Source of the DNA: Bispira polyomma
Taxonomy: Eukaryota
NCBI GenBank assembly: GCA_965649765.1
Contig: OZ287749.1
Span: 92,256,001-92,320,000, forward strand
DNA: 64,000 bases
Direction of reading: 5' to 3'
Part shown: one piece after another, positions 25,530 to 64,000 of the stretch
How the letters are laid out: each line of letters starts with the position of its first letter
Position numbering within the stretch: the first letter of the stretch is position 1
Program-made: the position numbers and the translations under genes
Notes under the pieces: model-generated
Database searches by the model: none
What the model saw: the letters and a program-made list of their open reading frames with translations, nothing else
What the model was told of the DNA's origin: nothing

Positions 25530-26246
25530 TTATATCATCTGTTCACTAGTGCTGAAATCCCTCAATGTTTTCTTGATAGTCGAGGGTGTATATGACTTTT
25601 TCAGCATATCCCACTTTAGCGTCCTCCACTTGTCCTGTACTTCCTGTGATGGAGTGTCCACTGCGGTCAGTTTCTCCACCACACTGGTGGGCCCCCGGTC
25701 GTGTAACTCCAGCTGCAGGTTCATCTGTTCGGGGACACTCCTAGTCCTCTTGAGGGCGGTGAAGGCATTTTTTGAGTAGACATCATCGGCAGAATTCAAT
25801 CGTCCACGTGCCCAGGTGTCTGCACTGTCCGCTGAAGGCTCAAACAACACGTCAATGGCATTGCCATGACGAACAACATTCTTCACAGAAATACTGTATT
25901 TCTCTACAGAGCCTGGTTGGTGTTTTCCACTACTACCAACTTTGCCATTAGTCCGTGGTGCCATTTCATTGTGCCTGCCATGATGCGTTTTATCACCATT
26001 GCCAAGTTTACCATGGCTTACACTAAAGCCTTTATGACCATTTGGGTTATCCTTTGGATCAGTAGGCTTGGCGCCAGTCTTTGGTTTAGGTTTAACCATT
26101 GGCAAGTTGTTCTTGCCTTTGTTATCAGTTTTTGTGTATGGTGTATGGACAGTAGAGCTGTTCTGCTGCATTAGACGGACACATTCCTCCTGCCAGGCGT
26201 CCACTGCCTGCCAGATCTCAGATTCCACCTGTTCCAGGGTCTGAAG
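25530..26246 (-). CDS. NEK9: NEK9 terminal coding exon E24 (low-complexity C-terminal extension)
   Basis: ttgacag|CTT CAG ACC CTG GAA CAG, in frame with ORF 25530-26228; 717 nt ending TAA; joined to NEK9 by phase and coiled-coil continuity only. Confidence 0.72.
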   Translation of the reverse strand, partial: LQTLEQVESEIWQAVDAWQEECVRLMQQNSSTVHTPYTKTDNKGKNNLPMVKPKPKTGAKPTDPKDNPNGHKGFSVSHGKLGNGDKTHHGRHNEMAPRTNGKVGSSGKHQPGSVEKYSISVKNVVRHGNAIDVLFEPSADSADTWARGRLNSADDVYSKNAFTALKRTRSVPEQMNLQLELHDRGPTSVVEKLTAVDTPSQEVQDKWRTLKWDMLKKSYTPSTIKKTLRDFSTSEQMI

Positions 26247-32200: not shown

Positions 32201-35200
32201 AGCTAGTAGTTACCCACCTTACTGTTGGACTTCTCTAGTTTCACCACACTCTCACTGTTACTAATGACATACTTACCTTACCTTTGGATTTCTCTAGTTT
32301 CACCACACTCTCACTGTTACTAAGGACATACCCACCTTACTGTTGGTTTTCTCTAATTTCCCCACACTCTTACTGTTACTAAGGACTCACCTTACTTTTG
32401 AATTTCTCTAGTTTCATCACACTCTTACTGTTACTAAGGACATACTCACCTTACTGTTGGTTTTCTCTAGTTTCATCACACTCTTACTGTTACTAAGGAC
32501 ATACTCACCTTACTGTTCGACTTCTCTAATTTCCCCACACTCTTACTGTTACTAAGGACATACTCACCTTACGGTTGGATTCCTCTAGTTTCATCACACT
32601 CTTACTGTTACTAAGGACATACTCACCTTACTGTTGGTTTTCTCTAGTTTCATCACACTCTTACTGTTACTAAGGACATACTCACCTTACTGTTGGATTT
32701 CTCTAGTTTCATCACACTCTTACTGTTACTAAGGACATACTCACCTTACTGTTGGTTTTCTCTAGTTTTATCACACTCTTACTGTTATGAAGGACATACC
32801 ACCTTACTGTTGGATTTCTCTAGTTTCACCACACTCTTAATGTTACTAAGGACATACCCACCTTACTGTTAGTTTTCTCTAATTTCACCACACACTCACT
32901 GTTACTAAGGACTCACTTTACTGTTAGTTTTCTCTATTTTCACCACACTGTTACTGTTACTAAAGACATACACACCTTAGCGTTGGTTTTCTCTAGTTTC
33001 ACCACACTCTCATTTAGTTCACTGTTCCTTCCTTTTAACCCCTTGTTTTCTTCTCTCAGACTCGACACCTCAAACTCTAGTTGGCTCACTAGTGCCGAGA
33101 GTCGGGCCACTTCTGTGTCTCGTGTGGAGTTCTGGCTGTCAGAAGCTGAATTCGTGAATGTGTCCTGTGTGAAAATGAGGAGAAAGTCGCTTTAGAAATG
33201 ATACATAACCTTAATACATCGATCATGTTCTCACACATACATACAGTAGAACTTCTATTATCCAAACTTCTAATTGTCAAAATATTTGGTTTTATGAACT
33301 CATTTCTCCCAAAATGTTTGGATAATACAGCTTCTTCTGTATATGGTGTTAAAACAACATACTGTCTAGTAGTTTATTTTTGTATATAACTACATGTTAA
33401 CTAGCTATATCATAAGTTGTTTGTCAAATACTAAATATTTGGGAATTTGCTAATGCTCCATGTTGAATTTACTAATCTCTCACTGAGTTCAAAATGTTCT
33501 CTAAAAATTCGTGCTCAAACTGCTTGTACCGCTAATTGTACAGTTATCATTACTCAGCAGTATTTGTGAATTTCCCACTCAAATATTTTGTGTACAACTG
33601 TTCACTGTACTTTGAGGGACCAAAAGGGCCTAATAAATGCTAATACATGGAATTACATTGAAAAGATATACTATTTTACCTCAATTTTAGCTTGATTTTT
33701 AAATGTTTACATTAGAATATGCTGTTGCATTTCCAATTTACTGTAACTTTGATCCTTTTCTATTCCCCTTAACCACTTTGCCAATGATGGACAATAATTC
33801 CACCATACCGAAGGAAAATACTTTAACACTAATATTTTATACCGTTGACTGCTGGCAGATGGACATGGCACTGGCGACTACAAATTGTCGACAGACAAGG
33901 TTGTCAAGGGCTCAAACATCACCTTGAGTAACTTCTTGAGAACTTATATCGAACCCCTCCCCATCATATGTTAGGGGAGTAACAGTGATTAGGGCTAATT
34001 GGGTACACTTGGGCAGTCGGGAAGTAGTATAGATGTGCGGGTATAAATTTAAACACAATAACAATAATTAGTACACATTTTGTCCATGCACATAAGACAG
34101 TTGAATCCCGGAGACTTTTGCAAGGTAAGGGACATGACCTCAACCTTAGTTACTACTGAAATATATAATTCAAACTGCAAAATAAAACTATTGTCAATTA
34201 ATTACCTCATGTAAGGTAAGGGACATAAGCTGAACTAGAGTTGCTATGGAAACATATAATAAGCATAACTGCAATATGAAATTTTTTGGATAAATTCCTA
34301 CATCTCATGAATTCTAATTGCCGGTCACAAGACAAGTGAGGATTTTTTATTATATATTAGTCACTACTGCATGCAAGGTGATAAAAGATGTTTTTGCCAA
34401 AAACTGCCAGACGATCTGTGTGACTAAGAGCTGTGACAGAATTATAAACTTGGGGTAGCCTTTCCATGGCTGAAATCTTAACTGTGTCAATTAAGAGGAA
34501 TTTTAACGATAATTTCATTTACCAGTTATACTTGTATGTTTTCTGTACATTTTAGCTTACACTTTGTCAGTTTAAACAAACCACCTACTTGTGTGGATCC
34601 CTCTGCAGTAAGTTGGTCTACATCACAGTTGTCAGGGGTGATGGGAATGATCTCAGCTTCCTCAAGTTCCTGCAGTATACAGAAAACAAAAACATGTATA
34701 CATGTAGTAACACCTAGAATGGTAGAATAAAAGAAGTTCTTTAAGTGTAACAGAGAGCTCATTCTGCCAAGGAACAATTGTATAACAAACAATAAAAGTA
34801 CCGGTACTGAAGTAACCGTCTTTAGACACCAAGTTGGTTTGTGTACAAAAAATAATTTAAAATAATGAATCGACATTTGTGTTTATACCACATTTTTATG
34901 AAATTTGCTGTCAACATCACTTTTCAGACACGTATTCAAGGGGTCGTATTCAATGATTATAGATAGCTATTAATGAGATAACGTCATTCAGAGTGCACCA
35001 TATGTCATTGAGTGTAAAATCCACTATTTGATAACAGAAGTTTGGATAATAGAGGTTCTAGTATATTACAGGCATCTCTCTTTGGGTATAGCCCATGTTT
35101 TTCATAATAACCTACCTCCAGGCTTCTGTAAATACAGGTAAAACTTTGAACAGTAAACCACATTCTCTTTGGAGCCCATCCCCTACAGTTCCTTCAATTC

Positions 35201-38200
35201 AAGTTACAAGCCCAAGGGCTATTCAGAGAGAAAGTTTATGGTATACATCTCTCTAGACACGCACCTTTTTCAGCCAAGGTGGCGGTACAGACTCTTCCAC
35301 TGCAGGTGTGAACGGTACCTCAGAGGCTGGAATGTATTCACCTTCTAGTTCCTACAACAAACACAGGGGGAAATAGTGTATACAAGGACCATATGTGTCC
35401 CTGGACCTGGACATTATTACTATGTTGTGATGATATGGGGGTACGGAAAAAAATAATAAAAGAAGATAATCAGTCAAATTTATTTACAAAATTTACGTCT
35501 GAGTTTTCTGGTGAACTTTTCCGGTATCTCTTAATATGTTTATATTTCATATACATGCTTATATCGTCCCTTAACCACATTTAACCTATTGCAACAATTA
35601 TATAAATATTCTAGACATTGGTGGTGTACACTAACTGCCTGTAACCACGGCATCTGAGAACTCTCCTCCACATCAGCCACCTGTCTGTCAGAGTTAAGCC
35701 CCGCCCCCTCCTCTAACAGCTGGGTGGGACTATTGAACACAGAGTCTGTAATACTGGCCTGAGATTCGACTGAACACATATTGTACACTGAAAATGTAAC
35801 ACAGATACACAGAGGTTAATGTATGTATACTAACTAGATACAATAGGAAGATTGTTGTTTCATAATTTTTAATATTTCATAAAGTGTTAAAAGCCATTAA
35901 ATCTCTTTCCATTTTGGTACACCTTATACATGTCATGCTTGTTGACTTCACTCATGTATCAAGACTGCCAAACAGAGGAATTTGGTATTGGACCTTTGCA
36001 TGAGCTATTAAAGAACAAAAAATTTCAGCTCAGTTTTTATAATTACGGAGAGATGTCCAGAATATACCCATTAATAAGGAAATCTAAAATTCCCTGTACT
36101 TTCCGCCATATTGACAAGTAGAACCTCTATTATTATCAGAACATGTTGGGAGAGTAAGATATTGCTTGGATAATAGAAGGGTCATAAAATAGAAAAGGAT
36201 TTTTTGTATAAAAACAATAGGAAAACATAAATTTGGGAGAGTGGAAATGAGTTCATAAAATCGAATATTGGTATAATAGAAGGTCGGATAATAGAGGTTC
36301 TACTGTAGTTCCAACTGAAGTAGTCTATCATATATATATTTACAAATAAATTTGGGCTGTATTCATGTTTATGATACTTTTTTATGAGATTATGGTATTC
36401 ATTTCACCCATAGCACAATTTGAAATAAATCAATAAACAGAGGTTCTTGAGAGGTTTCAACCTGCTCCCTATAACAGTCAATCTATTTCCAAGAGGGAAA
36501 AGAGGCTTTCTGTTTCCCCTGTGAAGCCTAACAAGAGGAATGGATCTGGAGCTTTCTCTATTACTGCCCTGATGTGATAGAATATTTTTCCCTGTTGGCT
36601 TAGATCACCAGAAACACTTTCTTGGTTTAGGAGAACAACTTTCTCTTGAAACTCACTTACCCCCTCTTAATTGCCTCCCTGTACACCCCTACATCTTTCC
36701 TAATGACTTTGCCATTGTTTTTGGACTTCTTCTCTATTGGTTAACTGATTCAGTTGCGCTTTAGAAGATGCCTCGTATCGATAACGCGTGTTAAAAGGGC
36801 AAAATACAATAGAATGTTGGCTTACCTCTGGCACCAGAAGATGTAGAGCGGAGAGTCTTCTGAGATAAGACTTTCTCTGTAAGAAAAGAGAAAATGACAT
36901 TTACAAGGTCACAACATTGTCACTACATTGTTATTTGTTAGAGTGTAATTCTGTTGTACGGGTATTTATATTGTCAAAATCACAAAAATAGCACAGAATT
37001 TGTGTATATATGTGTATAAATATAAGACACTGTCCTGACCTGCAATAACTCCAGTACTCCAGCAGAATGAGTTAATGGTTGAGACACGGTGCAGGGCCCC
37101 AAAGATTGGTCTGGGTAAGGCAAAACACTGACCATCTGGTCCTTTACCCTGGTCAGCTGCGTCTGTCCCTAGACGGCCATTCTCACTCAGACCCCAAGAG
37201 TACACCAAGTTATCTGTAACATGTCATAGATATGTGTACAATGCAAAACAAAGCTACCATCAAACTGACTTTAGTGCGGGAGGGGTGGGGGGGATTGCAA
37301 TTATACTATATCTTCAAATGACCTTATTTCTTGCCAAAAACTCTGTCTTTAATTTCTGCTTTGTCAGAATTTTCGGGTTCATCATAGCAGAGTTCAATAT
37401 GTTTTTTAAAGAAATGTAAGCAAACGAAAATAAACAAACTGAAATTTGGGAAACGTAACAAAAAAATCAATGTATAGGCTGTTTTGTACACGTTCTGTAC
37501 ACGTTTGTACACGCATTAAACACGTTTTAATAGCTGTTTTAATTATGTTTGTACCATTAACCAAGTTTCTAAGCAGGTTGGCCACATTTCTAAATACGTT
37601 AGCAATGTTTCTCAACATGTTTTAATCTCGTTCTCTCTTTTCACGCTTGTTTTAAATAGGTTGCATTCGCTTCTTCCATGTCGTTCATGTTTCTAGTTAT
37701 CATTTCTATGTATAGTACGTCTTACTGTTGTCCTTTCTGTTTATATATGCATTGAATACTTGTCATGCATTTGCCACGAGAAATGATGGGAGCATATCAC
37801 TTACGTATGCATATGTTCAAGTACACATACTACGTCCACTATGCAAATGCTTACGTTTCACCTTACGTTTGCTATTTTTAGCCATTTTTTTAGCGTAATC
37901 GGAACGTAAGCCAAGTGTGAAAAAGACATGTAGATAAATTATATACAAAACCATTCAAAATTTCACTGTGACAAAATTATTTATACCTTTTAAGTTTTTA
38001 ACTCAGTGAATCTTTTTAACAGTTTGTTTACACTTTAAGTCAAGGTGACACTTTTACCTGCTGTAGCGATCACAGTAAATCCATCTCCACAGCTGACCTG
38101 GGTGACCTTTTGACCTCCAAGGACCCCACTGACCAAGGTCACACCAGTGCGTTCCTTGTAGTCTCCCACGCCCAGCTGGCCGTATTTGTTAGAGCCAAAC

Positions 38201-41200
38201 ATGATCAGGTGACCTCCAGCTGCGGGAAAAATGGACACAGAATGTATAGATGGACATTTTTCACTGGATTTAATTAACTTTCTATATTATGTATTATATT
38301 ACGTAGCAATGGAGGGGACATTGTAAATATTTTTTACCCAGATTATTTAGTGCTCACAGATTATAAATCATGCGCACAGTTTACTTTAACACAAGCAGTA
38401 ACTCACAGTCTATTGCCCCTGTATGTGTAGGACCCAGAGATACTGTCTGAATGTTGTACTTGTATAAACACAAGCAGTAACTTACAGTCTATCGCCCCTG
38501 TATGTGTAGGACCCGGCGATACTGTCTGAACGTTGTACTTGATCAGAGGCTTCACTGTACTCAGGTTATAGCGACACTGGATGTCATAGGAAATCTGAAA
38601 GGCACAAAATAAATTGACTGTTTACTATTGAATATCTTCATCTTGAAGTAGGCGTGTTTATATCAATAACGAATACATTTAGAGGAGTTATGTGACATTT
38701 ACCCACCTGTTATTTCTTACACAAACCCTGTATTGTATTATATCACACATATTACTACAGGAATTTACCCACCTGTTTTTATCCCTTGTACAAACACTGT
38801 ATTGTATTATAACACAGATATTACTACAGGCACCTACGCACCTGTTTTTATCTCTTACACAAACCCTGTATTGTATTATATCACACATATTTCTACAGAA
38901 ATTTACCCACCTGTTTTTATCTCTTGTACAAACACTGTATAGTATTATAACACACATATTACTACAGGCACCTACTCACCTGTTTTTACCTCTTATGCAA
39001 ACCCTTATTGTATTACATCCCACATATTATGACAGGCATCTACTTACCTGTATTACATCACTCATATTATGACGGGCATCTACTTACCTGTATTACATCA
39101 CACATATCATGACAAGCATCTACTCACCTGTATTACATCACACATATTATTATGACAGGCATCTACCCACCTGTTCCTTTCTTTTATACAGTCCCTGTGC
39201 CGCACTGTTAAAGCCCAATTTGTTGTGTTCGTTACTTCCACATGCCAGTACACGGCCGTTAGTCTTCACAACAAACGTGTGGTCTGAGCCGGCATGTACA
39301 CTATGTATGGCGTGTCTCCCTCTGGTCTGAACCTGAAGTTTAAGGTCATCAAGTGAATATAAATACAGTTTGTTCAAGGTTATCAATATAGACAGAATTT
39401 GTTCATGGTCACTTAATCAATACAGACAGAATTTGTTCAAGGTTACTTGCCAATATAGGGATGGTTTGTTCAAGGTCACTCAGTCAATATAAACACAGTT
39501 TATTGAAAGTCACTTTGTCAATATTGACACTACAATTCCTGACGCTGTTTATCTTACATGTGTATGTGTGTGCAGTGTAGAAGTATTAAATATGATTTAT
39601 GCTAAATACAAATGGCAACTACCATCATAAAACTATTAATTTTAAAAGATGCATAAATATTTTTTTAGTCAGCAGGGGTTAGGACGGGTGGAGGCGGGGA
39701 CTTAAGTTAGGGGTTGGGTTAATTCCTATATTGGATTAATATCAAAATGTAGAGGTTATACACGTAACTACTGTATATATATATTTACCTTTTGTGGTAC
39801 AGCGAAGTTATCTTCAGAACCCAGGCCTAGTCTGCCATACTCCCCACAGCCCCACGTGTATACTTCACCCTCCTTAGTGAGGGCGACCACATGGGCATCT
39901 CCACAGGAAACCTAGAGTAGTATAGACATAGGAAGGTTAAAACTAGACACATCAAACACCTCAACCTCCTTAGTGAGGGTGACCACATGGGGATCTCAAC
40001 ATAAAACCTAAATAAGTATAGACATAGGAAGGTTAAACACAACAAATACCTCACCCTCCTTAGTGAGGGCGACCATATGGGCATCTCCACAGGAAACCTA
40101 GAGTAGTATAAACATAGGAAGGTTAGAGACGTCAAAAACAGGAAGCTTACACTACACACAACTCCAGAACATGGGCATCTCCACTAACCTGTGGTGTACA
40201 AGATGCTAGAGTGTTTGACATTAGATCAATCTTCACTACAGGTCTGAAGATTATACCTTTCCACAGGCATGCAAGTATGCTACCTTTGGGTACTGAAAGT
40301 GAACAGTTGGTTGACAAGTAGAAAATCCTAGACTGATCTACAGGTGTGTAATACATGTATATAATACATATACCTGGTCTACAGTTGTGTAATATATAAA
40401 TATAACCCATTTACCTGATCCACAGGCTTTGATGTAAAGAAGTCTATGAGTACAGGTGTACACACTTCGTCCCCCTCCTGGTTATCACACCCCAGACAGC
40501 CGTAGTAGTCTGAACCAAAGGAATACACGGACCCAGAGTCTGAAAAATAAGTTAATGAACATCTTAGAGACATCAAACAGGACATGTTTCTGTGGTAAAA
40601 AATAGAAGCATTATCATGCTCCATGTGCCATGGCAACAAAACCACTAAACTTGGCAACACCAAAAGCAACCGCAAAAGCAATCCCAAGCAAGCTACTCTC
40701 ATGAAAAATCGACACACTAAATTTGGGGATGATATCTTTATTATTTTTTTTCTAATGAACAAAAACCCCAAATTTGACAACAATAAAATGTCCACCCTTT
40801 TAGGATCTGCCCCTAGGGCCTGCATGTATTCTCCAAATATATCAGGCTCGACTCAGACTCAACCCTAAGACCTTCCTATCTCTGACAAGAAGGAAGGCAA
40901 GTAATATTTGACTGCATATTTGAATTCAGTACTCAAAGCTCTATTAAAATGAATGGTCACAAGTATAGGTTATTTCTATATACAGGAGTTACACGTGGGC
41001 TCCACTTAACCCTTCCTTTACTGGCAGGAAAGAACTGCTGGGAACTGAAATAGGTTCACAGATAGCTGAAGTCACTTAAACACACACTACAAAATTACTT
41101 CCAGCATTAAATAATGACCTTGTTGTATAGCTTTTTAAACAGGGAAGTCTTCTGTACTAACAATTTCCTACTGTGACCAACTGAAGGAAAATAACATAAG

Positions 41201-52870: not shown

Positions 52871-52903
<33 letters not shown>

Positions 52904-55900
52904 TGATAACACTTTTTAATTTAGTTTTTCAGACTTGGCGGGAATAATGTGACATTCAAAAAACAATGTTGTCAAGTTACATTTTAAAAGGTGGTACAAC
53001 TTTAAATAAAATTACTTCTAACAGATTTCAACAGAGTTTACAGACAATTTGAGTGTAACAGACTCCACAGAATAATATCTTCTTCTTTAAAACTTTTTCA
53101 CTTTGTTTTTTGAGCCATTATTTCAATATCGATCATTTTTCTAATGTTTGAACAAAAAACTTTAAAAATGATATTAACCTCGTTTCTTTTACAGGTATAT
53201 ATATACCATTTTCCATATAGTATTAAGAAATTGATAATGGTAAACACACTATTGTCGTAACATAGAATCCCAAGTAATATTTCTAGAATTGCAAGATCCA
53301 GCTTTATCTGGAAAGTCTTAAGAATTAACTACCTGATATTCTTCCACAATATCACAACAGATTTGCATTCATAAAAAAAATGTTCTATTGTGTCCATTTT
53401 ACTACATTTTTCACAATTTGGTGAAGTAGCCTTTTTCCAAAGAAACAAGTTGGAGTTACATGTGACAAATCTATTTAGGATAGTATACTGGAAACTTTGT
53501 AATCTAGAGTCCTGGCATATATTGTAAGGAAGTTTAAAAACTGGACTCCAATCTAAATTGTCCAAGAAATTATAGTATTCTGTCCATTTATTGACTGCAG
53601 TCGGATATTTATAAGTAAATGCTAAATATTCATAAATGTCTTTACTTTTTATCATTGAGATGTCTTTCCGTAAATGTGGAATATCGTAAGTTGTCATTTT
53701 CATTGGTTTGATGTTGGTTCGAACAAGATCTTTCCATTTTTTAGGAATACAAGATATAACTGAATTAAATACCATGATAGGAATACTGCATTTAAACTTG
53801 ATGTTTAGCTCCTCTCTAGTTAAAAATTTGTTACCATGTATTAAATCTCTCAGATATATTATCCCATTATCTTTCAAAAAGTCATATTTACGATTCAATG
53901 GTTTATTCTCAATCAGAATGAAACGATTGCTTTGTAATTTCTCTTGCATAACTTCGTTGTAATTCTTAGATGCCACTGAATAAAAGGAATACCAACAATG
54001 TAGTACTTGTTTATAGAATTCACTACCAATTGACCAAACATTTAAGTTGCTTGGATTAACTTTGGAAAATATGGTGGTTGAATCCAAGATTCTACATAAC
54101 GTCTTTGCTAAAAGTCTCCATTTATTTACAAAAGTATTATTACTGTTACAAAATAATCTTTTAACCCAGTATGCCTTAATTGCAATGATAGTTTTGCTAA
54201 AATCTGGCATCTTAAGACCCCCCTGCTCAATGCTATTAATAATTGCATCATTTTTAACTTTTGGCCTTTTATCTTTTCCCCAAAGGAAACTGAACAACAT
54301 GTCATTCACTTCATTTATAAAGTGGTCAGGTACATGAATCATACTACAAATATTAATGATAAGACTTAATATAAGACTTTTGATGACCACTATTTTACCT
54401 CTAAGGCTTATTGCTTGACTAGACCACAGGTTGATAATCCTTTGTATATCTCTTAGTTTGGGTTTTAGATTTAAGTTATATACTTCATTTTTGTTATGAG
54501 AAAACCAGACCCCTAGCGTTTTAAAAGGGCCTTGCTTTAATTTTTTTTGGATATGTTTGTCTTTCAAGGTTTTCTCGCTAAGGGGGATTAGTTCTGTTTT
54601 TGATTTATTAAGTCTTAGACCAGAACAAATACTAAACAATTCTAATTCATCAAAAGCATACCTCAATGAGTTTTGATCATGTAAAAAGAGAGTTGTATCA
54701 TCAGCAAGTTGACTAATCTTAAATTCAAAGTTATCAATTTTGATTCCTTTAATGTTTGTTTCAGACCTTATATCTTTTGCTAAGAATTCAACAACTATTA
54801 TAAATAAGAGTGCACTTAAACAACAACCTTGTCTTATTCCACGGTGAAGCTTGAAAAACAGAGAACCTTTGCCATTATTTATGACGCAACTTTCAATATC
54901 AGAATATAACATTTTGACACAGGCTATGAAATCCTCTCCAAAGTTAAGAGCTTTGAGGCATTTTATTAGGAAAGACCAGTTAACAGAATCAAAGGCCTTT
55001 TCAAAATCCACTAAAACAAATAAGCCAGGGATAGAATTTTGATTTGAATAATCAATTATGTCAAAAATGGTCCGAATATTTTCACCTATAAATCTTCCTT
55101 TAATATATCCCACTTGGTCAGGGTTAATGATTTTATCTAAGACTTTTTGTAAACGTGATGCATAAAGTTTTGTTAAGATTTTGTAATCAGTGTTTAAAAC
55201 ACTAATAGGTCGCCAGTTTTTCAGTTGACATAGATCTTTGTCCTTTTTTGGGACTAAAGTTATGACTCCTCTTTTCTGGTCAAGCAATAACTGGCTATGT
55301 TCAAGAGACCATTTGAAACTGTCACAGACAAAATATTTGACCTTGCACCAAAAGAATTTATAAAACTCTGTTGACAGCCCATCTGTCCCAGGTGATTTAT
55401 TGTTTGACAAATTTTGCAATGCTTTTGCACATTCGTCTATTGTGATAGGATTATCACACATAATTTTGTCCGCCTCATTAAGTGGCTTTATGTTGGGATT
55501 ATTCAGAAACTTATTTTCAATATTTTCTATTTCTTGTTTGTCAATCAGGGGGCTGTTACTGTTATACAAATTTTGAAAGAAACGTTGTTCTTCCATTAGT
55601 ATTTCGTTTTCATTAGTGATAGGCCCATTGGAAGTGTCTAAACGTTTTATACATTTTGTGTTGCAATTTTGTTTCTCCAGATTGAGAAAATACTTAGTAT
55701 TTTTCTCATTTTCCATTTTGTGTTTTGCTCTTGAGCGCACTATAGAAGCATTTGCTCTAGTGGTGTAAAATTCATTTAAATCTAATTTTGTTGTTTCATA
55801 TGATTCTAAAATTTCAGGGGTAGGATTTTCATTCAGTTTTATCTCTATAGTTCTGAATTTTTCAATCATGTCAGTTTCAAGTTTTCTTCGTTGTTTTGCT

Positions 55901-58900
55901 TTGAAAGAGGAGTAAGAAATTGTTTGTCCACAAATTTTGCATTTAATATAGTCCCACAACAATGACTTGTTCTCAAAAGTACCATATTCTGTATATGATT
56001 TTGTTAATAAAGAACAATTTTGTTGTATATATATATATGGATAATGGATAATAAAAGTACTACATATTAAGTCTTTGTGATACTTGTCTGTATGAGAGCA
56101 TACCTTTGACTCTATAAGAATTGCTAAAGTGTAATTAGCCAGAGTTTTATAGTTAGCTCAGAGTGGATGACAGAATGGAATTTACAGTTGTAGATAATAG
56201 TTTAAACTCCTAAGAAACACACTGTAAAATATTTTAACGACAAATGGGTGTGTCATCACTATTTAATAATTGTTACATGTGCATCAGTCACAGTAAAGTA
56301 ATACAAGTTATATGTCTGTCTATCTAGTGGTAGAAATGAGGGCTGTTGTTTTAAAATCATGCCCTGTTAACTCAAATTCCTGCTTTAGCAGAGGTATTTC
56401 CAATGAACCTTTATAAAAAAATGTGATTTAACAGGGTTTAAATATAATAAACCCTTTCGACCCCAAGAGAAAAGTATCGCTGGGAACTAATGACAATTTT
56501 TTGGTAATAGGTTACAGATGATTGGAGTCACTAAACAACACACTACTTCCGGCATTCAATAACAGCCTTGCGTATAATGTTTTAAATGAGGAAGTCTGCT
56601 GTACCAACAATTTCCTATTGTGGGTAACTGAAGGAAAATACAAAAATGTTTTTAAGGTGTCGCCGGCTTGCCGATAGACATGGGTTTGGGAAGTAACAAA
56701 TTCCGTCGACTGCTAGCCAACAACATAGGGGTCCAAAGGGTTAAACTTAATTCTATCATAAAATAATATTAATGCAATAGAACTGATATTTTACGTACCT
56801 AGTTGGGAGAACAAGATTTTGTTCAGATGATAGATGGCCGATAAAACAAGCAGAAGTAATTTGGCACAGAAACTTGTATATTAGGGAAAATGAAAAAAAA
56901 TGCAACGAAAATGCATAAAATTGAATTACAAAGGTGGTACGTTAGAGGTTCTTTCGCAATGTCTTCTCTGAGAAACCAGAAATAGTTTTCTTGTAAATGT
57001 GGACCAAGATGTTAAAAAGACAATATAACTTCTATCATCTGAACATGCTAGGAGAGCAAGGTTTTGTTCAGATAATGGAAGGGTAATGAAATATAGAAAA
57101 GGTATTTTAGTATAGGATAGGAAAATGTACATTTGGGAGAGTGAAAGTCTGTTTATATATATTTCAACATGACAACCTTGTGTCACCGATTCCGATTGGC
57201 TCTAAAGTATGGTCAAATCTACGACAACTAATCAGAACACACGAGACCACTTTTCTCCATTATGGCTCTTACATCTAGTGAAGTAGATCCACAGTAAAGC
57301 GAAATCATTTAGGCAATTATTTTAATTGTTTATGTTAGAATCGGAATAATAGATCCCAAACCTGAAAGATTTGGATAACAAAAGTTTGGATAATAGAGGG
57401 TTTTTTACTATATATATATAGCATGTAAACTGATAAGAAGAGCCCAGGGTCTTAACTAAGTATCACAGCTTCTACATCCAGTCAAGTGCCTCCACTTGTG
57501 AATAATACACAAATTAATCTGGCTGCTTCACTGATCAAACAGGACTTTCCTTTTAAACAGGGAGAGAACTTGTTCAATAATGCAGGTATCTAGTTGTAAC
57601 CACTCAATCCATATAGTGCCTGGATGTCTGGATGTGAGAGCTGGTGGGGCCAATTTGCTGCTAACTAACGATTTGTTCACATGCAAGGCTTTCTCCAGTG
57701 TGATACGTTAGGTCTTACTTGCGATTGGATTTATTCGGTTTTATTTATTTTTCATTTACTTTGTCTGCAATGATAATCAAAAAGATTGCTACATCTATAC
57801 ATCTATTTTTTTTAATAATTTTTGTATCTAATTATTTTTGTTATTATTATTTTTTTTTTTTTTTTTTTTTGGGGGGGGGGGAGGGGGGGGAGTGTGAAGA
57901 TTCAAATATCTCATTATATTATATTAGGGCACGAAATGATAGGAACAGAAAAACTTTACATATAGATTCGAAGAATTGGTTTGAACATTGTCCAAGATCT
58001 TTACCTTGCTATTACACGGGTTATAAATCTCCATGGCTAGCCTCCTTGTCCATTTTCCCACGAGCATTACCAGTACTTTTATGAGCTTATATATCTAATC
58101 ACTACCTCTGGTACATTTAATCTGTGAACTGAATTGTTCTATTATATTACCATAGATCTATCATTTGTTTTCAAGCTGTAGTTACTCTACTGAATAATGT
58201 TCTAAGATGTCCACTCTTACCTTACATGCCTTAAATCTAAACACCAAGGTTTTTATTACTTTGGTTTTTTTGAGAAACAAGGAAACATATTTTAAATAAA
58301 AAATTTGTATCGTTTAAAAATAGACCTAAAAGTTACCAGGACAAATATCATTATGCTAGGGTGGTTTTATAAATTTATTTGTCACATCAAGGTGTGCAAG
58401 CAAAATTTAAATAAAAGCAATGTTCCTAAATCTGGGTGAAAATATTTTATGGTTTGTTCCTAACTTTGGTTGAAAAAAAATTTATTTTGTCCAAGCAAAT
58501 TATATTTTGCCCAGCCAAAATAAAGTTTGTTTACAACCCCAAAAAAATTAAATCATTTTGCCTGAGCAAACTTATTATAATTTTTACATTTTACTAAAAA
58601 TTTGAGTTTTCAAATATTACATTTTACTAAAAATTCGAGTTTTCAAATATTTGTTGTACCACGTCCTAAATATGTTTCCGTATGATACAGATAAATGTAG
58701 TTCATTTTAATACATATCATATAAGTACAGTTGAACCTCTTTAAGTCGAACCTCATGGGACCAGTAAAAATGTTTCTAGTTAAGCAGGATTTCCACCTAA
58801 CAGGGTAGATATTAATAGAAAAGGCCTTTGTGGGACTATAAATTTTGTTCTACTTAAAATGCAAATTGAGTTAACAGAGTTCTACTTCAAGGGGTTTGAC

Positions 58901-61900
58901 TGTATGTCTCTGGGCCCGTATTCACTAACAGAATTAGCCAAGCCTTAGGCTTAAATCTAGCACAAAAGAATACTAGATTTAAGCCTAAGACTGGGCTAAG
59001 TCTGTTAGTGACTACGTACAGACCCTGATGTATGGACTTTACAAACTTTATTAAAATTATTGATCAAACTTCAATTTAGTACTCACGGATCTCCTTTAAC
59101 CAGTTCTGGAGACATGTAGAGTAGGGTCCCCACATACTGAAATACACAACAAGAGAGGTCAGAGCTAAAACACCAGGGTAGTATTCACAGAAGGTCTTAG
59201 TCTTAACTTAGTTTTAAGCTTAAAATTATGGTCTTTGATTTTGGCCGCAAATGTTTAACTTGATCATAGTCCAAGTGACAGTAAGAAAAGATCATTGGAT
59301 AGTGTTAACTTTGCACTTTACACTTAGACTAACAGTAGACAGTCTTACACATTGTAGACATTAATGTTAAGCTTAAGACGAAGACCTTTTGTGAATACGG
59401 CCCCAGGCTTTTACCAACAAAGGGATAAAATCCAAATTATTGTATACAGCAAGGAAACTCCCTGAGTATAACCCATATTTTCATATAACAGCCCATCCCA
59501 ATTTTTTTTTTGGTGTGAACTATACAAATAAATATTCATCAGCTTAAGCACGCTTCAGATCTCTTCCTCTGCTTGTTTATCTAGCCTTTAAGATATCTTA
59601 CCGTCTGAGCCATGTGGGACTTGCTGTTCATGATCCGTGAAATGCCAAAGTCTCCCAGTTTGATCAGCCCTGTCTTGGTGAGAAAGATGTTCATAGTCTT
59701 GATGTCTCTGGAAACACACACACACAATCCAACAAGTTAGTCAAAGAGTATCTCACCATTACATGTGAATCAGTTGGGTCATAATACACGTTAAATACAA
59801 AAAAGTCTGAATACAAAAGTGGTAAAACATGAATATTTTAACATCTTCACCACTAAATTATCTATTCCAAATAACTTGTCACTAGAACACACAACACAGA
59901 TGACTTCCAGCATTTCATAACAGCCTCATGTATACTTTTAATGTATATTTACCATCAATTACCTGTTTATTATACCTCGGCAAAGAATCAAAAGATTCTA
60001 ATGGTTAAAATGCGAATTAAACGCTTCTGGGATCTCAAGAAGCTTATATTCTGTAATTTTTATATTATATTTATGCACCAGTAACATTTCTATTATACCA
60101 CTTACCTGTGTATTATACTGTATTTATGCACTCCTCACCTGTGTATTATACCATACTCATGTATATGAGCCACTGCAGACACCAGCTGATACAGATACCA
60201 TAGAATCTCATTCTCTGTCATTAAGTCTTTGATCACAGCCAGCTTTTCACATAAACTGCCATCTGTGTAACAGAAACAAATAGGGCTAAATTCTATATAT
60301 TTAAAGTAGTGTACTTCCTATTCATATTCAGTTTTATACATATATATCTATCTTCATCTGGTATTCACAGCACTGAGTAACCATTTCCTGACTGTAACAG
60401 TCAACTGCATCAGTTACTCTTAACTACTACTACTAGAAGTCTAGAAGTTACTGTAGCTGGCCGAACGCCAACCTTGGCAGTTTCAAAATGGCCCATGGCG
60501 GTTTCGAAATGGCCACCTATTTTTATTTTCCATTTTGGGACCAAGATATGTCTGGATTATAATACAACTTAAATATTAAATAATCTGTGCAGCTGTATTG
60601 ATCATAAGATTCTAAAATTGTTATGAATAACAAAAAATATGGAATTGAAATAAACTTATTATTATCATACTATTATTATTATATACCCTGTAAAATGTCC
60701 TAAAATGGCAATGGCCGTTTCGAAACTGCCAAGCCATTTCACAACTTAGCAAAGGTCCCCAAATGGCCATGGCCGTTTCGAAATGACCAACGGTCGCAAA
60801 ACGGCAAGTAACAGTTACTACTATCACAGCCTTAGGGTTTAATGTTATCATCAAGGTTTAGGGTTAGGTATTCCAATACCAAATCCAACATGACTGCACC
60901 CTGTCCAGCGAATTCTAGATTTGTTCTGAACAAAGTCCCATTACTGCACCATAACTACACTAACCATTAATTTGGAGGTGTTTTTACTAACTTGTGTACA
61001 GCCTTTTACTACAGTGATTTTCATAGAATTTTATCTTAGATTTTATATATCTGGGTGCTTCCAGAGGTAAACTTTTAGGAGATACCTGTCCACTTTATAT
61101 GGACCTCAGCTAACATCAGTTAATGAGCATAAGTTAACGCAAAAACCCTTCTAATTGTAAAACAAGGGGTTAATATGAAAAGAACCGAGAAACCACAGAG
61201 GGTCCCACATCCCTACTTTGGTGTAGTCGCCAAATTTATTTAGAGGGAAGATAAAACATGACGAACAAAATAGAAGAGGCACTGACTATAAGACGACAAG
61301 AAAATTGAAAACTGGAAGAGTTAAAATGTTTGCATGAAGTTCAGATAACAGAAATTTGGATAATGAAGGTCCCTACTGCACATTTGGTCAAAAGGTAACT
61401 AGTATACATCTGCATACTTACCATACAATTCTTAGTACAGTAAAAAGTTGGTAACACAACAGGAAAACATACCTTTGAAGAGTAAAAATAAGATCAAATA
61501 TTTAAAAAATAGAGGTTTTACTGAATTTTACTAAGCAAACAAGTCTAAGCACATGTACCAGTAAAATCACAGGGCCCGTATTCACGAAGGGACTTAGCCA
61601 AGTCTTAGGCTTAAATCTAGCACAAAGTTATACTGATTTAAGCCTAAAAATTGGCTAAGTCCCTTTGTAAATACGGGCCCTGGTCATTCAAATGATAAAA
61701 TCCATGGGCAAGCTGGGAACATGCAATTGGCTACTGATGACAACCAATACTAGGGGCCTTGGTGTTGTGGTAACACTCTTACCCCAACCTCTGCCATCAT
61801 GGGTTTTGAACCTCAGCCCTGGTGTGTATGTGAGCAAGTAGATTTGCTGTAGGTTGGAAGTTTGCAGATCAGATAACCTTGACCAAACTACCCTATTCTG

Positions 61901-62329
61901 ATTTCCTCCACCAGTGAACTGCCAGCTGTGATAAAACTAGACTTGAGACAACCAATGCTATGTTGGGCGACTGTACATTTTCAGGGTACATGGTTAGTAA
62001 ATGGAATGTAATCTTCAAAGAAATCCCCTCTTACCATTACAAACTCCATCTCAATAATTACAGTGTGTTCCCATCCAGGAAGTGGTTGTATATGTACAAC
62101 ACATCTGTGTATTATACTGTATTTAAGCACATTCAGTATATCCCCTCTTACCATTACAGAACTCCATCTCAATCAGCAGTGTGTCTCCATCCAGAAAGTG
62201 GTTGTAATATGACACGATGTTTGCGTGATTCAGCATAGACAGGATGTCAATCTCATTTTGAGCGTCCTTCCTCTCCTTCTCACTCAGTTTACCCAGCATC
62301 ACTTCCTTCCACACAACCAGGGAGTTGTC
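25530..62329 (-). CDS. NEK9: NIMA-related kinase 9 (kinase + RCC1 repeats + coiled coil), multi-exon, 5'-partial in window
   Basis: Spliced exons give [10 protein letters not shown]...[23 protein letters not shown]...GTLLYMSPE...[11 protein letters not shown]...EVYFWGGGK...GQLGHGD...[12 protein letters not shown]...[10 protein letters not shown]...[11 protein letters not shown]...[11 protein letters not shown]...[13 protein letters not shown]. All are colinear with vertebrate NEK9 as I recall it. All introns are GT-AG and the phases chain without a break to TAA at 25530. Confidence 0.95.
27400..27973 (-). mobile_element. interspersed element with about 135-bp internal tandem repeat (HINE-like)
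   Basis: Three to four copies of CAAACTTAAAAGTGCCTA...TTATTGGTC.TAGAGGTTTG...GAAACCAA...AGGAAATCA; terminal CATCGGAGAACC.ATG hairpin. Confidence 0.55.
30033..30257. mobile_element. MITE with about 45-bp imperfect TIRs
   Basis: TAGAGT...CACTGTATCTGAAATTAGCCACC versus GGTGGCGAGTTTCAGATACAGTG...ACTCTA; no clear TSD. Confidence 0.6.
31644..31718 (-). CDS. NEK9: NEK9 exon E23 (coiled coil)
   Basis: tttcag|TTA CAA...GGC AAG|gtcagt; [25 protein letters not shown]; phase 0-0. Confidence 0.8.
32213..32975 (-). repeat. 59-bp tandem array (13 copies) of E22 3' end plus donor
   Basis: Unit on minus strand TATGTCCTTAGTAACAGTAAGAGTGTGATGAAACTAGAGAAAACCAACAGTAAG|GTGAG. Confidence 0.95.
32976..33164 (-). 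CDS. NEK9: NEK9 exon E22 (coiled coil)
   Basis: cacag|GAC ACA TTC...GCT AAG|gtgtgt; ...[46 protein letters not shown] with heptad pattern. Confidence 0.85.
33843..33877 (-). CDS. NEK9: possible 35-nt NEK9 exon E21b
   Basis: tttgtag|TC GCC AGT GCC ATG TCC ATC TGC CAG CAG TCA ACG|gtataa; phase 1-0 fits the 34585 donor and E22; weak donor, no homology support. Confidence 0.4.
34585..34669 (-). CDS. NEK9: NEK9 exon E21 (donor at 34589 or 34585)
   Basis: tgcag|GAA CTT GAG GAA GCT GAG ATC ATT CCC; [27 protein letters not shown]; two adjacent GT donors. Confidence 0.82.
35265..35351 (-). CDS. NEK9: NEK9 exon E20
   Basis: tgtag|GAA CTA...AAA AAG|gtgcgt; [29 protein letters not shown]; 87 nt, phase 0-0. 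Confidence 0.82.
35636..35787 (-). CDS. NEK9: NEK9 exon E19
   Basis: ttcag|TG TAC AAT...CAG GCA|gttagt; [10 protein letters not shown]...[11 protein letters not shown]; phase 1-0. Confidence 0.8.
36826..36876 (-). CDS. NEK9: NEK9 exon E18
   Basis: tacag|AG AAA GTC...AGA G|gtaagc; [17 protein letters not shown], matching vertebrate EKVLNSKTIRSNSSG. Confidence 0.88.
37040..37213 (-). CDS. NEK9: NEK9 exon E17 (RCC1)
   Basis: tacag|AT AAC TTG...GCA G|gtcagg; [16 protein letters not shown]...[26 protein letters not shown]. Confidence 0.92.
38058..38219 (-). CDS. NEK9: NEK9 exon E16 (RCC1)
   Basis: cgcag|CT GGA GGT...GCA G|gtaaaa; [25 protein letters not shown]...[13 protein letters not shown]. 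Confidence 0.93.
38387..38541 (-). repeat. 79-bp tandem duplication of E15 3' end plus donor
   Basis: 38387-38462 versus 38466-38541, near-identical. Confidence 0.93.
38486..38594 (-). CDS. NEK9: NEK9 exon E15 (RCC1)
   Basis: ttcag|ATT TCC...GAC T|gtaagt; [36 protein letters not shown]. Confidence 0.91.
38698..39170 (-). repeat. 69-bp x5 plus 40-bp x3 array of E14 donor
   Basis: Donor-containing ACCTG core recurs at about 38701, 38767, 38836, 38905, 38974, 39042, 39082, 39122. Confidence 0.9.
39171..39332 (-). CDS. NEK9: NEK9 exon E14 (RCC1)
   Basis: ttcag|GTT CAG...GAA CAG|gtgggt; [42 protein letters not shown]...KRKEQ. Confidence 0.92.
39338..39530. repeat. about 33-bp tandem array abutting E14 acceptor
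   Basis: Unit GTTCAAGGTCACTTA.TCAATATAGACAGAATTT, about 6 copies. Confidence 0.8.
39789..39911 (-). CDS. NEK9: NEK9 exon E13 (RCC1)
   Basis: tctag|GTT TCC...CAA AAG|gtaaat; [41 protein letters not shown]. Confidence 0.93.
39912..40195 (-). repeat. about 92-bp tandem copies of E13 acceptor plus exon start
   Basis: Copies at about 39958-40040 and 40048-40130, partial at 40168-40190. Confidence 0.92.
40415..40539 (-). CDS. NEK9: NEK9 exon E12 (RCC1)
   Basis: ttcag|AC TCT GGG...GAT CAG|gtaaat; [42 protein letters not shown]. Confidence 0.93.
41346..41493 (-). CDS. NEK9: NEK9 exon E11 (RCC1)
   Basis: tccag|GGT CCT...ACA G|gtgagt; [39 protein letters not shown]. Confidence 0.93.
41876..42013 (-). 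CDS. NEK9: NEK9 exon E10 (RCC1)
   Basis: tacag|GTC TAC TTC TGG...TGG GCG|gtgagt; [13 protein letters not shown]...[15 protein letters not shown]. Confidence 0.93.
42438..43025 (-). repeat. array of E9 donor copies (about 17 units of 24-35 bp, two of them long)
   Basis: Core AA(C/T)CACT(G/C)ACCTCACTTG; long copies at 42678-42736 and 42898-42958. Confidence 0.92.
43026..43146 (-). CDS. NEK9: NEK9 exon E9 (linker)
   Basis: cccag|T GAG TTT...AGT GAG|gtgagt; [40 protein letters not shown]. Confidence 0.88.
43940..44440 (-). mobile_element. degraded 3' end of L2/CR1-group LINE
   Basis: Minus strand reads [38 protein letters not shown] (with a frameshift), the typical L2-group ORF2 end; (TTAGA)n tail at 43940-43959. 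Confidence 0.7.
46078..46340 (+). mobile_element. tRNA-derived SINE (relative at 26595-26780)
   Basis: A box TGGCCTAGTGG and B box GGTTTGATCCC; shared body CTATCTCCA.TG.CAG..TAAAG..CCTTG...CATCCTCAAG. Confidence 0.6.
49114..49361. mobile_element. MITE family copy (others 45002-45232, 45251-45430, 47612-47851, partial 40825-41000)
   Basis: GGGCTGGTATTCTC...GAGAATACCGACCC ends; shared core CTCTATTAAAATGAATGGTCACAAGTATAGGTTATTTC. Confidence 0.75.
50410..50474 (-). CDS. NEK9: NEK9 exon E8 (kinase end)
   Basis: tacag|GAT CCC...GCC AA|gtgagt; [21 protein letters not shown]. Confidence 0.9.
50928..51032 (-). CDS. NEK9: NEK9 exon E7
   Basis: ttcag|AAT GCC...AAC AAG|gtgggt; [35 protein letters not shown]. 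Confidence 0.9.
51123..51257. mobile_element. MITE family copy (others 25250-25400, 52004-52143, partial 49400-49500)
   Basis: GGGCCATATTTACAAAC...TTTGTGAATACCAGCCC ends with repeated CAGCCAATCA core. Confidence 0.7.
52170..52251 (-). CDS. NEK9: NEK9 exon E6
   Basis: tccag|G TAT AAC...GCT ACG|gtcagt; [27 protein letters not shown]. Confidence 0.93.
52380..52555. repeat. about 30-bp tandem repeat
   Basis: AAGGT(C/T)AAGGTCAAA.TTGGG.C units, about 6 copies, directly beside the LINE 3' end. Confidence 0.75.
52587..56009 (-). mobile_element. 5'-truncated Tx1/L1-clade LINE retrotransposon
   Basis: 877-aa RT ORF; 3' AATAAA plus poly(A) (T-run 52583-52598); target-site duplication AAGAACAATTTT at 52575-52586 and 56010-56021. 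Confidence 0.93.
53329..55962 (-). pseudogene. LINE ORF2 reverse transcriptase (endonuclease missing, premature stop)
   Basis: Motifs [46 protein letters not shown]...[10 protein letters not shown]. The frame continues past TAG 53329 into [16 protein letters not shown], so this stop is a lesion. Confidence 0.88.
56451..56742. mobile_element. piggyBac-like MITE (relative at 41007-41297)
   Basis: ACCCTTTCGACCCC ... GGGGTCCAAAGGG|TTAA ends; about 150 bp of internal sequence shared with 41150-41295. Confidence 0.55.
58728..58902. mobile_element. pogo-type MITE (relative at 5584-5753)
   Basis: TA|CAGTTGAACCTCTTTAAGTCGAA...CTTCAAGGGGTTTGACTG|TA. Confidence 0.7.
59087..59136 (-). CDS. NEK9: NEK9 exon E5 (activation segment end)
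   Basis: ttcag|TAT GTG GGG ACC...GAT CC|gtgagt; [17 protein letters not shown]. Confidence 0.92.
59602..59707 (-). CDS. NEK9: NEK9 exon E4 (catalytic loop, DFG)
   Basis: tccag|A GAC ATC AAG...CAG ACG|gtaaga; [35 protein letters not shown]. Confidence 0.94.
60139..60262 (-). CDS. NEK9: NEK9 exon E3
   Basis: cacag|AT GGC...CAC AG|gtgagg; [42 protein letters not shown]; phase 1-2. Confidence 0.92.
61570..61682. mobile_element. short palindromic MITE, probably PIF/Harbinger type (relative at 58910-59027)
   Basis: CAGGGCCCGTATT...AATACGGGCCCTG, whole element folds back; CWG flanks. Confidence 0.75.
62152..62329 (-). CDS. NEK9: NEK9 exon E2 (kinase subdomains II-V)
   Basis: tatag|GAC AAC TCC CTG...TTC TGT AAT G|gtaaga; [59 protein letters not shown]; 178 nt, phase 0-1. 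Confidence 0.93.
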
Positions 62330-63232
62330 CTATACAGAATATACAAACAGAGGCTACAGATTTGTCCTACACAGAGGCTTAAAACAAGTGTCTGACAGAA
62401 TTAAACCACTCAGTTTACCGAGCATGACCTCCTTCCAGACAACCAGGGAATTGTCCTATACAGAAACAGAGGCTTAAACAAGTGTCTGACAGAATTAAAC
62501 CACTCAGTTTACCGAGCATGACCTCCTTCCATACAGCCAGGGAATTGTCCTATACAGAAACAGAGACTTGAAACAAGTGTTTAACAGAATTTAACCACTC
62601 AGCTTATATGAACTCCTTCCATACAACCAGGGCATTGTCCTACACAGAAACAGAATACACTAAAAAGTAGGCTTAAAACAAGTGTCTCAGAGACTTAAAT
62701 CACTTAAGACAACCAGCGAGGTATGCTTGAAATAGTATCACTTAAAATACTTTTACTTCCTTTTAAATGTCAAGGGAGTTGTATCACTTAAAATACTTTT
62801 ACTTCCTTTCAGATGTCAAGGGAGTTGTCCTGTAGACAAAAGGGAAATACAGAGAAAAAACAAGTGAGTTTACTCAACATGACCTTCTTCCAGGCGACCA
62901 TCGAGTTCTCCTACATAGAGTAACAGAGCGAGAGACAGAAGCACAGGCTTCAAATACAATTAAATGAGAATGAAAGCAGTTTAACCAGCATCTTCAAATT
63001 CCATAGCACCTTAGAGTTGTCTCATACAGACACGGACAAAATCCGGACAAAGAGACACTAAAAGACAGGCTTGAAATGCACCAAAAACAAGAATTAAGTC
63101 ATTCAGTGAGTTGTTCAACACAGTCAGACACAGGCTTTAAATACAATGAAATGCGGATAAAAATGAGCATTAAATCACTCAGTTTACCCAGCATCATATT
63201 CTTGAAGACTACAAGTGAGTTGTCCTACAAGG
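62330..63232 (-). repeat. about 94-bp array of E2 acceptor plus exon start (about 8-9 copies)
   Basis: Core CACTCAGTTTACC.AGCAT.AC.TCCTTCCA.ACAACCAGGG..TTGTCCTA at 62406, 62500, 62595 and degenerate to 63230. Confidence 0.92.
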
Positions 63233-64000
63233 ATGAACATTCCTGTAAAATATGAAATACAATGGACCACCAGCTTTTTTTGCAGAGGCTAGACTAGACA
63301 GATGGGAATGGACAAACTGGCAGGTTTCTAGACTGAGTTCATTCTTGTATGATATATATTCCCCATTTGATTGGAAAAATAAGCCTAGATTTCCATGTAA
63401 GTGACTGTGGATAGCTAAGATAGCCAGATAACTGGCACCTGACAGCATATTGGACTGTTTCTATGCGTGGGATTTATATAGGTTTCCTGGATTGTTTACA
63501 GGCTGCAGGCTGACACAAACTAACTTCTTTGCTATGTAGGCCAATAGGGGCAGTCAGCAGTTAATGTCGGGTACATAAAAACAGTACTAAAACAAAGAAA
63601 TTGACATAATCGGTCATCAGCCGTTGGCTATGGCCTTTCAGCCGTCTGTAACATTTAAACATAGGCCAATAAGACTTCACCTTGTGATTTAACCAGGTCA
63701 CTATTCACTACAATATACATTCTTAGCAACATCATTGGCTTTATTGAAAGGGAAACCTGTTTCAGTACTTGAGACTTAGGAAACCCGGGACAGATTATTT
63801 TGTACCTGCCAAAACCCTTCTTTTGCACATTAATAAACAACCAACATCTTTTAAATTTTTTATTTTAATTTGTAACTTCTTTTCGTTAAAGTAAAATCAG
63901 ACTTGCTTTAATTTATAATTTTTTGCTGCAAATAAGTGAAAATGTTAAGAGTAACCTTAACCCTATAAACAATGTGTTTTAGTATGTTCCAAACATGTAA

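What the first reader, a model, noticed from the sequence alone, without database searches (positions are those of the whole stretch)
32213..63232. Gene-wide 'junction echo' system: ten independent tandem arrays, each anchored on a different NEK9 exon boundary
Seen: donor-side arrays at E2, E3, E9, E12, E14, E15 and E22, acceptor-side arrays at E2 and E13, plus a purely intronic array abutting the E14 acceptor. The units are unrelated to each other (about 33-94 bp). Nine consist of the exon edge, the splice site and adjacent intron, and the copies extend into the intron while the exon stays intact. Most substantial non-TE tandem arrays inside this 37-kb gene sit on a splice site. Inference: either a mutational process targets splice junctions (e.g. 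co-transcriptional R-loop or break repair with template switching), or selection keeps arrays of decoy splice sites. I know of no named system with this gene-wide pattern.
Basis: partly seen in the sequence, partly recalled or inferred. Interest (0 to 1): 0.9.

Follow-up and report, generated by a model that had tools for sequence, protein, structure and literature searches.

The report
"Mirage" splice-junction minisatellites in NEK9
In this invertebrate, about one exon edge in five to seven has been copied head-to-tail, splice site included, into the neighbouring intron; this repeat type is already named ("mirages", from lancelets) and looks harmless, but why exon edges carry them about five times more often than intron interiors is still unexplained.

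Summary
Real, but not unnamed. The minus-strand NEK9 orthologue (E2–E24, open frame) has direct-repeat copies of 9 of its 45 exon–intron boundaries in the adjacent intron: seven clear arrays and two short echoes (E2, E3 donors). The tenth array is purely intronic. The E12–E15 echoes and part of the E9 array lie in read-derived contigs without a difference, so they are not an assembly artefact. The pattern is genome-wide: 24 of 174 junctions in unrelated myosin, kinesin and DEAD exons carry one, against 4.5 expected (5.4×, 95% CI 3.0–8.7). These are "mirage" minisatellites, described in amphioxus Adh3, globin, troponin C and PGBD5 genes. The intron-ward polarity follows from any duplication spanning a splice site and is no evidence of targeting. 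Decoy selection is unsupported: echo GT/AG is no better kept than first/second codon positions, and all 40 intact echo sites would give a stop or frameshift. Most likely these are near-neutral VNTRs whose birth, expansion or survival is raised at exon edges; I could not separate those. Babylonia NEK9 has its own, at least three of four at other junctions. The scan has reported the same thing on other pieces of this genome.

The parts
25530..62329 (-). NEK9 orthologue, coding exons E2-E24 (kinase + RCC1 repeats + coiled coil); exon 1 was not located and probably lies beyond the window; E19 donor read as GC
   Evidence: Hand-built model, all introns GT/GC-AG, 1107 codons with no internal stop; Pfam Pkinase and RCC1 exon by exon; best full-length relatives are named Nek9; most E2-E17 boundaries match Babylonia, Diadema and Pinctada. 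E18-E24 rest on frame and splice signals only.
62281..63250 (-). E2 acceptor mirage: about 90-94 nt unit (intron tail + AG + about 49 nt of exon), 3 good copies and about 7 decayed copies further out
62020..62216 (-). E2 donor echo: one copy of the last ~65 nt of the exon plus GTAAGAGG, offset 117
60080..60155 (-). E3 donor echo: two short copies, offsets 33 and 53; weakest case
42422..43075 (-). E9 donor mirage, compound (26, 35 and 118 nt units), 17 echo donors, 11 still GT
40333..40426 (-). E12 donor mirage, 41 nt x 2.3
39860..40200 (-). E13 acceptor mirage, about 90-96 nt x 2.9 plus a decayed distal copy
39382..39523 (-). Purely intronic 34 nt x 4.2 array just upstream of the E14 acceptor; holds no splice site, so not a mirage
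38696..39178 (-). E14 donor mirage: proximal 40 nt x 4 unit, distal 69 nt x 5 unit
38388..38541 (-). E15 donor duplication, 79 nt x 1.9 (56 nt exon + 23 nt intron), 93% identical
32211..33012 (-). E22 donor mirage, 59 nt x 13.7; the functional unit differs from all 13 echoes at one codon position and at donor +4

Best explanation
These are mirage minisatellites and are near-neutral by-products. Step 1 (inferred): a short tandem duplication of 20-170 nt arises by ordinary slippage or break repair. Step 2 (logic): if it straddles a splice site, the copy attached to the exon body stays functional and the other copy lies in the intron, so the event survives, whereas wholly exonic ones are mostly purged. 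Step 3 (shown for a myosin mirage, inferred for NEK9): the pair expands and contracts like a VNTR, and inner copies homogenise while the functional edge unit drifts apart. Step 4 (inferred): the exon-contiguous site is spliced because only it is defined across a full exon; slips to an echo site give a stop or frameshift and would be removed by NMD. Step 5 (shown as a pattern, cause open): exon edges hold about 5 times more such arrays than intron interiors. About half of that excess (2.5x) is regional and also affects arrays without a splice site; the rest (about 3x) is specific to junction-spanning units and is strongest for multi-copy arrays. That points to longer survival and expansion beside a conserved anchor, perhaps with a higher birth rate.
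For: Matches the published mirage description. Genome-wide 24/174, in 22 of 60 gene clusters and all three families. Exonic share of the unit is compatible with uniform (KS P=0.47), and breakpoints do not cluster at the splice site (6 vs 4.9 expected, P=0.35). Echo GT/AG varies like first/second codon positions (10/42 vs 105/447, P=1.0). Unit lengths are not biased to multiples of 3 (4/24 vs 22/79). 40/40 intact echo sites are unproductive. Three myosin paralogue copies 99.5% identical in the flank carry 12, 17 and 24 units. Arrays without a splice site are 2.5x denser within 150 nt of exons (P=3e-4). Two-copy events are 2.6x enriched, multi-copy arrays 9.8x.
Against: The excess remains 3.1x (CI 1.5-6.2) even against the near-exon background and holds for high-identity arrays (7x at 92% or more), which survival alone may not explain. 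No RNA data were available to show that splicing is unaffected. Boundaries in the 87 test exons were predicted, not annotated.
Confidence: 0.6

Rival explanations
1. Splice-site-targeted mutation: paused polymerase, R-loops or nucleosome edges at junctions of germline-transcribed genes cause breaks repaired with short tandem duplication, so the birth rate itself peaks at the junction.
For: 3.1x residual excess over the near-exon background; young-looking, high-identity arrays are enriched 7x; independent arrays in Babylonia NEK9, 4 of 48 vs 0.8 expected.
Against: Breakpoints are not concentrated at the splice site; simple two-copy events are only 2.6x enriched, close to the regional 2.5x; no clear CpG-depletion difference between echo and other exons (0.33 vs 0.45, P=0.18); Diadema NEK9 0/42 and Pinctada 1/32.
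Confidence: 0.27
2. Selected decoy or helper splice sites: arrays are kept because extra U1/U2AF sites tune splicing, feed NMD or protect long introns from premature cleavage.
For: 40 of 50 echo sites in NEK9 keep GT/AG; the best echo scores above the real site in 21 of 32 arrays; mean mismatch at echo GT is low (0.022).
Against: Counted as sites, echo GT/AG is no more conserved than other GT/AG or codon positions 1-2 (P 0.1-1.0), so youth and the constraint on the real copy explain it. Copy number varies two-fold between 99.5% identical paralogues. At least three of the four Babylonia arrays are at junctions without an echo here. Published RT-PCR found no effect on splicing in amphioxus (PMC3087553).
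Confidence: 0.1
3. Assembly or detection artefact.
For: The three runs may come from the assembled individual, and only contigs, not raw long reads, were available.
Against: Copies differ from each other by 5-25%; independent read-derived contigs span four echoes with 0 differences; the same type occurs in 22 other gene clusters and in another species.
Confidence: 0.02

Closest known systems
'Mirage' minisatellites of amphioxus (Adh3: Canestro et al. 2002, cited via PMC3087553; globins BflGb6 and BflGb9: PMC3087553; troponin C and PGBD5: PMC3902484)
   Same: Minisatellite-like tandem duplications spanning an exon-intron boundary; both donor and acceptor sides; units of tens to about 160 nt; many but not all copies keep GT/AG; length instability; boundary units excluded from homogenisation.
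   Different: Reported there gene by gene in cephalochordates, 'possibly a more general phenomenon'. Here it is measured against a null across a 1.04-Gb genome whose NEK9 is only 53-58% identical to mollusc, urchin and chordate NEK9, and it is also seen in a gastropod gene. Splicing outcome and somatic instability were not tested here.
Internal tandem repeats at exon-intron boundaries of human segmental-duplication genes (PMC2812944) and intron gain by tandem genomic duplication (Rogers model; PMC4974935)
   Same: Tandem repeats that include splice signals and can shift or create introns.
   Different: There the repeats are mostly exonic and change gene structure; here the exon is intact and the copies are intronic. 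No new intron was shown to come from these arrays.
Tandem exon duplication with mutually exclusive splicing (own knowledge; PMC8373072 abstract)
   Same: Local duplication of exon sequence together with splice sites.
   Different: Whole exons with both sites and a kept frame, versus one exon edge with one site and unproductive read-through.

Membership tests
Mirage minisatellite | Tandem unit spans an exon-intron boundary (exon edge + splice site + intron) | tested here: met
   9 junctions in NEK9; 24 in other genes, units printed
Mirage minisatellite | Occurs at both 5' and 3' boundaries | tested here: met
   7 donors and 2 acceptors in NEK9; 14 and 10 elsewhere
Mirage minisatellite | Minisatellite-sized unit (10-160 nt reported) | tested here: met
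   26-117 nt in NEK9; 19-173 nt elsewhere
Mirage minisatellite | Many but not all copies keep AG/GT | tested here: met
   40 of 50 echo sites in NEK9
Mirage minisatellite | Copy-number instability | tested here: met
   12, 24 and 17 units in three myosin paralogue copies with 99.5% identical flanks (L005-L007). Shown between paralogues; allelic variation of the NEK9 arrays was not shown.
Mirage minisatellite | Concerted evolution inside the array, with the boundary unit excluded | tested here: met
   The E22 functional unit differs from all 13 echoes at two positions; shown for this one array only
Mirage minisatellite | Normal mRNA splicing is unaffected | not testable with these tools
   No RNA run holds the locus; only the open frame and conserved exon boundaries speak for it
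Mirage minisatellite | Somatic instability (reported for Adh3) | not testable with these tools
   Only contigs, no raw reads
Functional tandem exon duplication / alternative exon ends | Copies keep frame and both splice sites | tested here: not met
   0 of 40 intact echo sites give an in-frame, stop-free product; one possible 48-nt cassette upstream of E13 is the only candidate
Intron gain by tandem genomic duplication | New intron whose 5' end copies the downstream exon and whose 3' end copies the upstream exon | tested here: inconclusive
   Intron 12 is absent in three orthologues and sits at CAG|GT, but its ends do not match that pattern; the exon-like pieces inside are the E12 and E13 mirages
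NEK9 orthologue (host gene) | NIMA-type kinase followed by RCC1 repeats and a coiled coil; closest named relatives are Nek9 | tested here: met

The most novel reading that the evidence does not exclude
In this lineage, and patchily in other invertebrates, a splicing- or transcription-coupled DNA lesion makes exon-intron junctions hot-spots of short tandem duplication in the germline. The functional junction would keep re-seeding its array, which makes mirages a genome-wide mutational footprint of co-transcriptional splicing and a standing source of new splice sites and introns (NEK9 intron 12 a possible product).
Probability: 0.2. Interest if true: 0.75.

Novelty: new member of a known kind. 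Interest (0 to 1): 0.4.

Why it matters
Mirages were known from a handful of lancelet genes, with the mechanism stated as unclear (PMC3087553). A genome in which about 14-20% of junctions carry one gives thousands of independent events. That makes two old questions testable: whether splice junctions are mutation hot-spots, and whether such duplications seed new introns. It also matters in practice, because echoes mislead tblastn and gene predictors (they were picked up as false exons) and may disturb read mapping. The NEK9 locus itself is a rich example, not a special system.

Tried and rejected
1. NEK9-specific system: rejected, because unrelated genes show it at a similar rate (14% vs 13-20%).
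2. Polarity as evidence of targeting: rejected on logic.
3. Preferential retention of echo GT/AG: it looked strong at first (mismatch 0.02 vs about 0.14) and vanished against the right control, positions constrained in the functional copy.
4. Identity gradient away from the exon: not found (8 of 12 negative, P=0.34).
5. Third-codon-position excess among echoes: weak (0.31 vs 0.24, P=0.03 by site, P=0.24 by array); only a hint of re-seeding from the functional copy.
6. Units ending just past the splice site (an earlier scan note): not supported.
7. Near-exon intronic arrays being eroded mirages: only 1 of 24 resembles its exon.
8. Link to CpG depletion: not significant.
9. Two short contigs holding the closest E2 relatives (L095, L096) show no echo; they are too short and probably too distant to date the arrays.

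Limits. Canestro 2002 and Gao & Lynch 2009 were not held, so they are cited second-hand. The planned CCT, HECT, ligand-gated-channel and SLC6 samples (housekeeping vs tissue-specific contrast) were therefore not obtained, and I did not try another tool for them.

Full report
THE GENE. The window is C2:92,256,001-92,320,000 of a 1.04-Gb genome in 75 contigs. The minus strand holds a NEK9 orthologue. I rebuilt exons E2-E24 from the sequence. All introns are GT-AG except a GC donor at E19, and the frame is open over 1107 codons. Exon by exon, Pfam finds Pkinase and RCC1 repeats. The best full-length relatives of E2 are named Nek9 in Babylonia, Diadema, Branchiostoma and Heterodontus. Most E2-E17 boundaries coincide with those of Babylonia, Diadema and Pinctada. 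Identity to all of these is 53-58%, so I did not place the organism; earlier scan notes call it an annelid, which I did not test. The joined model was not searched.

THE OBSERVATION. For each of the 45 junctions I asked whether a direct-repeat copy covering the junction lies within 600 nt. Nine score 14 or more, all towards the intron: E2 acceptor and donor, E3, E9, E12, E14, E15 and E22 donors, and the E13 acceptor. Seven are TRF arrays; the E2 and E3 donor echoes are one or two short copies. The tenth array (39382-39523) has no splice site. Of 11 TRF arrays scoring 100 or more in the gene, 7 sit on a junction. A strict pipeline gives 6 junction arrays against 0.9 expected from the gene's own intronic arrays (P=3.5e-4). 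Contigs built from three public DNA runs span the E12, E13, E14 and E15 echoes and part of the E9 array with no difference (table 8). They may come from the assembled individual, but they show the arrays are in the reads. No RNA run holds the locus.

GENOME-WIDE TEST. I took 90 exons found by HMM in three unrelated families (myosin head, kinesin, DEAD), each with 1.5 kb flanks. I called their boundaries with a matrix trained on NEK9 and dropped three duplicates. Of 174 junctions, 24 carry a spanning array (14 donors, 10 acceptors), in 22 of 60 gene clusters. Uniform placement at the intronic rate predicts 4.45: 5.4-fold, P=8e-11, gene-level bootstrap 3.0-8.7. Unknown exons in the flanks make this conservative; predicted boundaries are a source of error. 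Arrays with no splice site are also denser within 150 nt of an exon (0.92 vs 0.36 per kb, P=3e-4). Against that near-exon rate the junction excess is still 3.1-fold (1.5-6.2). It is 2.6-fold for two-copy events and 9.8-fold for multi-copy arrays. NEK9 is therefore an ordinary to rich example of a genome-wide trait.

OTHER SPECIES. The same pipeline on orthologous NEK9 genes gave 4 of 48 junctions in Babylonia areolata (0.8 expected, P=0.009; not inspected by eye), 1 of 32 in Pinctada, 0 of 42 in Diadema and 0 of 18 in a partial Branchiostoma model. Three Babylonia arrays are at the E15 acceptor, E17 acceptor and E18 donor, which have no echo here; the fourth lies in the poorly alignable tail. 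The trait is patchy and the events are independent.

WHAT IT IS. Ebner et al. [quoted passage not shown] They occur at 5' and 3' boundaries with units of 10-160 bp; many but not all keep AG/GT; they are length-unstable and homogenised inside but not at the borders; RT-PCR showed no effect on splicing; and their mechanism is called unclear. PMC3902484 adds troponin C and PGBD5. Every structural feature I could test is met. 40 of 50 echo sites keep the dinucleotide. Three myosin paralogue copies with 99.5% identical flanks carry 12, 24 and 17 units. The functional E22 unit differs from all 13 echoes at two positions. I reached this identification from the literature before seeing that other follow-ups on this genome had reached it too.

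HOW IT WORKS. Polarity needs no special mechanism. If a segment spanning a donor is duplicated in tandem, the first copy stays joined to the exon body and the second falls in the intron; for acceptors the mirror holds. Such events survive, while wholly exonic ones mostly do not. Expansion then follows ordinary VNTR turnover, shown here for the myosin array and inferred for NEK9. Using any intact echo site would give a stop or a frameshift (40 of 40; these are nine arrays, not forty independent tests), so slips would be NMD substrates (inference from established knowledge).

SELECTION FOR DECOYS. Echo GT looked unusually conserved at first. The comparison was unfair, because the real site cannot change. 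Against codon positions 1-2, which are likewise fixed in the real copy, there is no difference (10/42 vs 105/447 variable sites, P=1.0). There is no sign of purging either. Unit lengths show no bias to multiples of three.

TARGETED MUTATION. The exonic share of the unit is compatible with uniform and breakpoints do not crowd the splice site, so no fixed lesion point is visible. Simple duplications are enriched about as much as the near-exon background, whereas long arrays are enriched tenfold. This favours longer life and growth next to a conserved anchor, where deletions are constrained and one copy decays slowly, over a sharp birth hot-spot. It does not exclude one: the residual threefold excess and its presence among high-identity arrays are unexplained. 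A weak excess of variation at third codon positions among echoes (P=0.03 by site, 0.24 by array) would fit repeated re-seeding from the functional copy but is not established.

VERDICT. It is a new member of a known kind (mirage minisatellites), genome-wide in this animal and already noted several times by this scan. What remains interesting is the size of the enrichment and its unknown cause, which population long reads and RNA-seq can now test. Interest 0.4.

Noticed in passing
window 39912-40414 (NEK9 intron 12): This intron is absent from Babylonia, Diadema and Pinctada NEK9, sits at CAG|GT and has a mirage at both ends. The gene also lacks two introns that all three others have (inside E3 at about +53-62 and inside E13 at +76).
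   Followed up: partly
window 40050-40097, minus strand: The second E13 echo reads as a 48-nt in-frame, stop-free mini-exon with an AG before it and a weak GT after it; a possible cassette exon. The neighbouring echo has a stop.
   Followed up: partly
window 52877-55962, minus strand (intron 5): LINE-type retroelement: 877-aa ORF with RVT_1 and zf-RVT, in the same orientation as NEK9, apparently 5'-truncated, with a homopolymer run near its 3' end.
   Followed up: partly
window 20512-21918, plus strand: Single 468-aa ORF with a weak F-BAR/FCH match (E=7e-4, below cut-off), convergent with NEK9.
   Followed up: partly
window 11299-11847, minus strand: 182-aa ORF without a Pfam match. Its end resembles the motif I recall from FAM53-family proteins (from memory, untested).
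   Followed up: no
window about 40820-40980, 45000-45430, 47600-47840, 49120-49360: Copies of a very abundant short repeat with inverted ends (MITE-like); summed contig depth at 40784-41131 is thousands of times the single-copy level.
   Followed up: no
L005, L006, L007 (C11, C8, C13): A myosin gene segment present on three chromosomes at 99.5% identity, sharing one 53-nt donor mirage with 12, 24 and 17 units.
   Followed up: partly
L016, L018, L021, L005: Some donor arrays have units that are almost wholly exonic, with only about 0-6 nt of intron. In L016 the unit starts at an exonic sequence resembling the donor itself, suggesting microhomology between a cryptic and the real donor.
   Followed up: partly
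G000 C1-C14: Many near-identical intronless kinase-domain ORFs of 411-418 aa are scattered over the chromosomes, possibly carried by a mobile element.
   Followed up: no
window 16273-16397 and 16482-16614: Two 31-nt x 4 arrays about 85 nt apart whose consensus units look like reverse complements of each other, as in a foldback or MITE.
   Followed up: no
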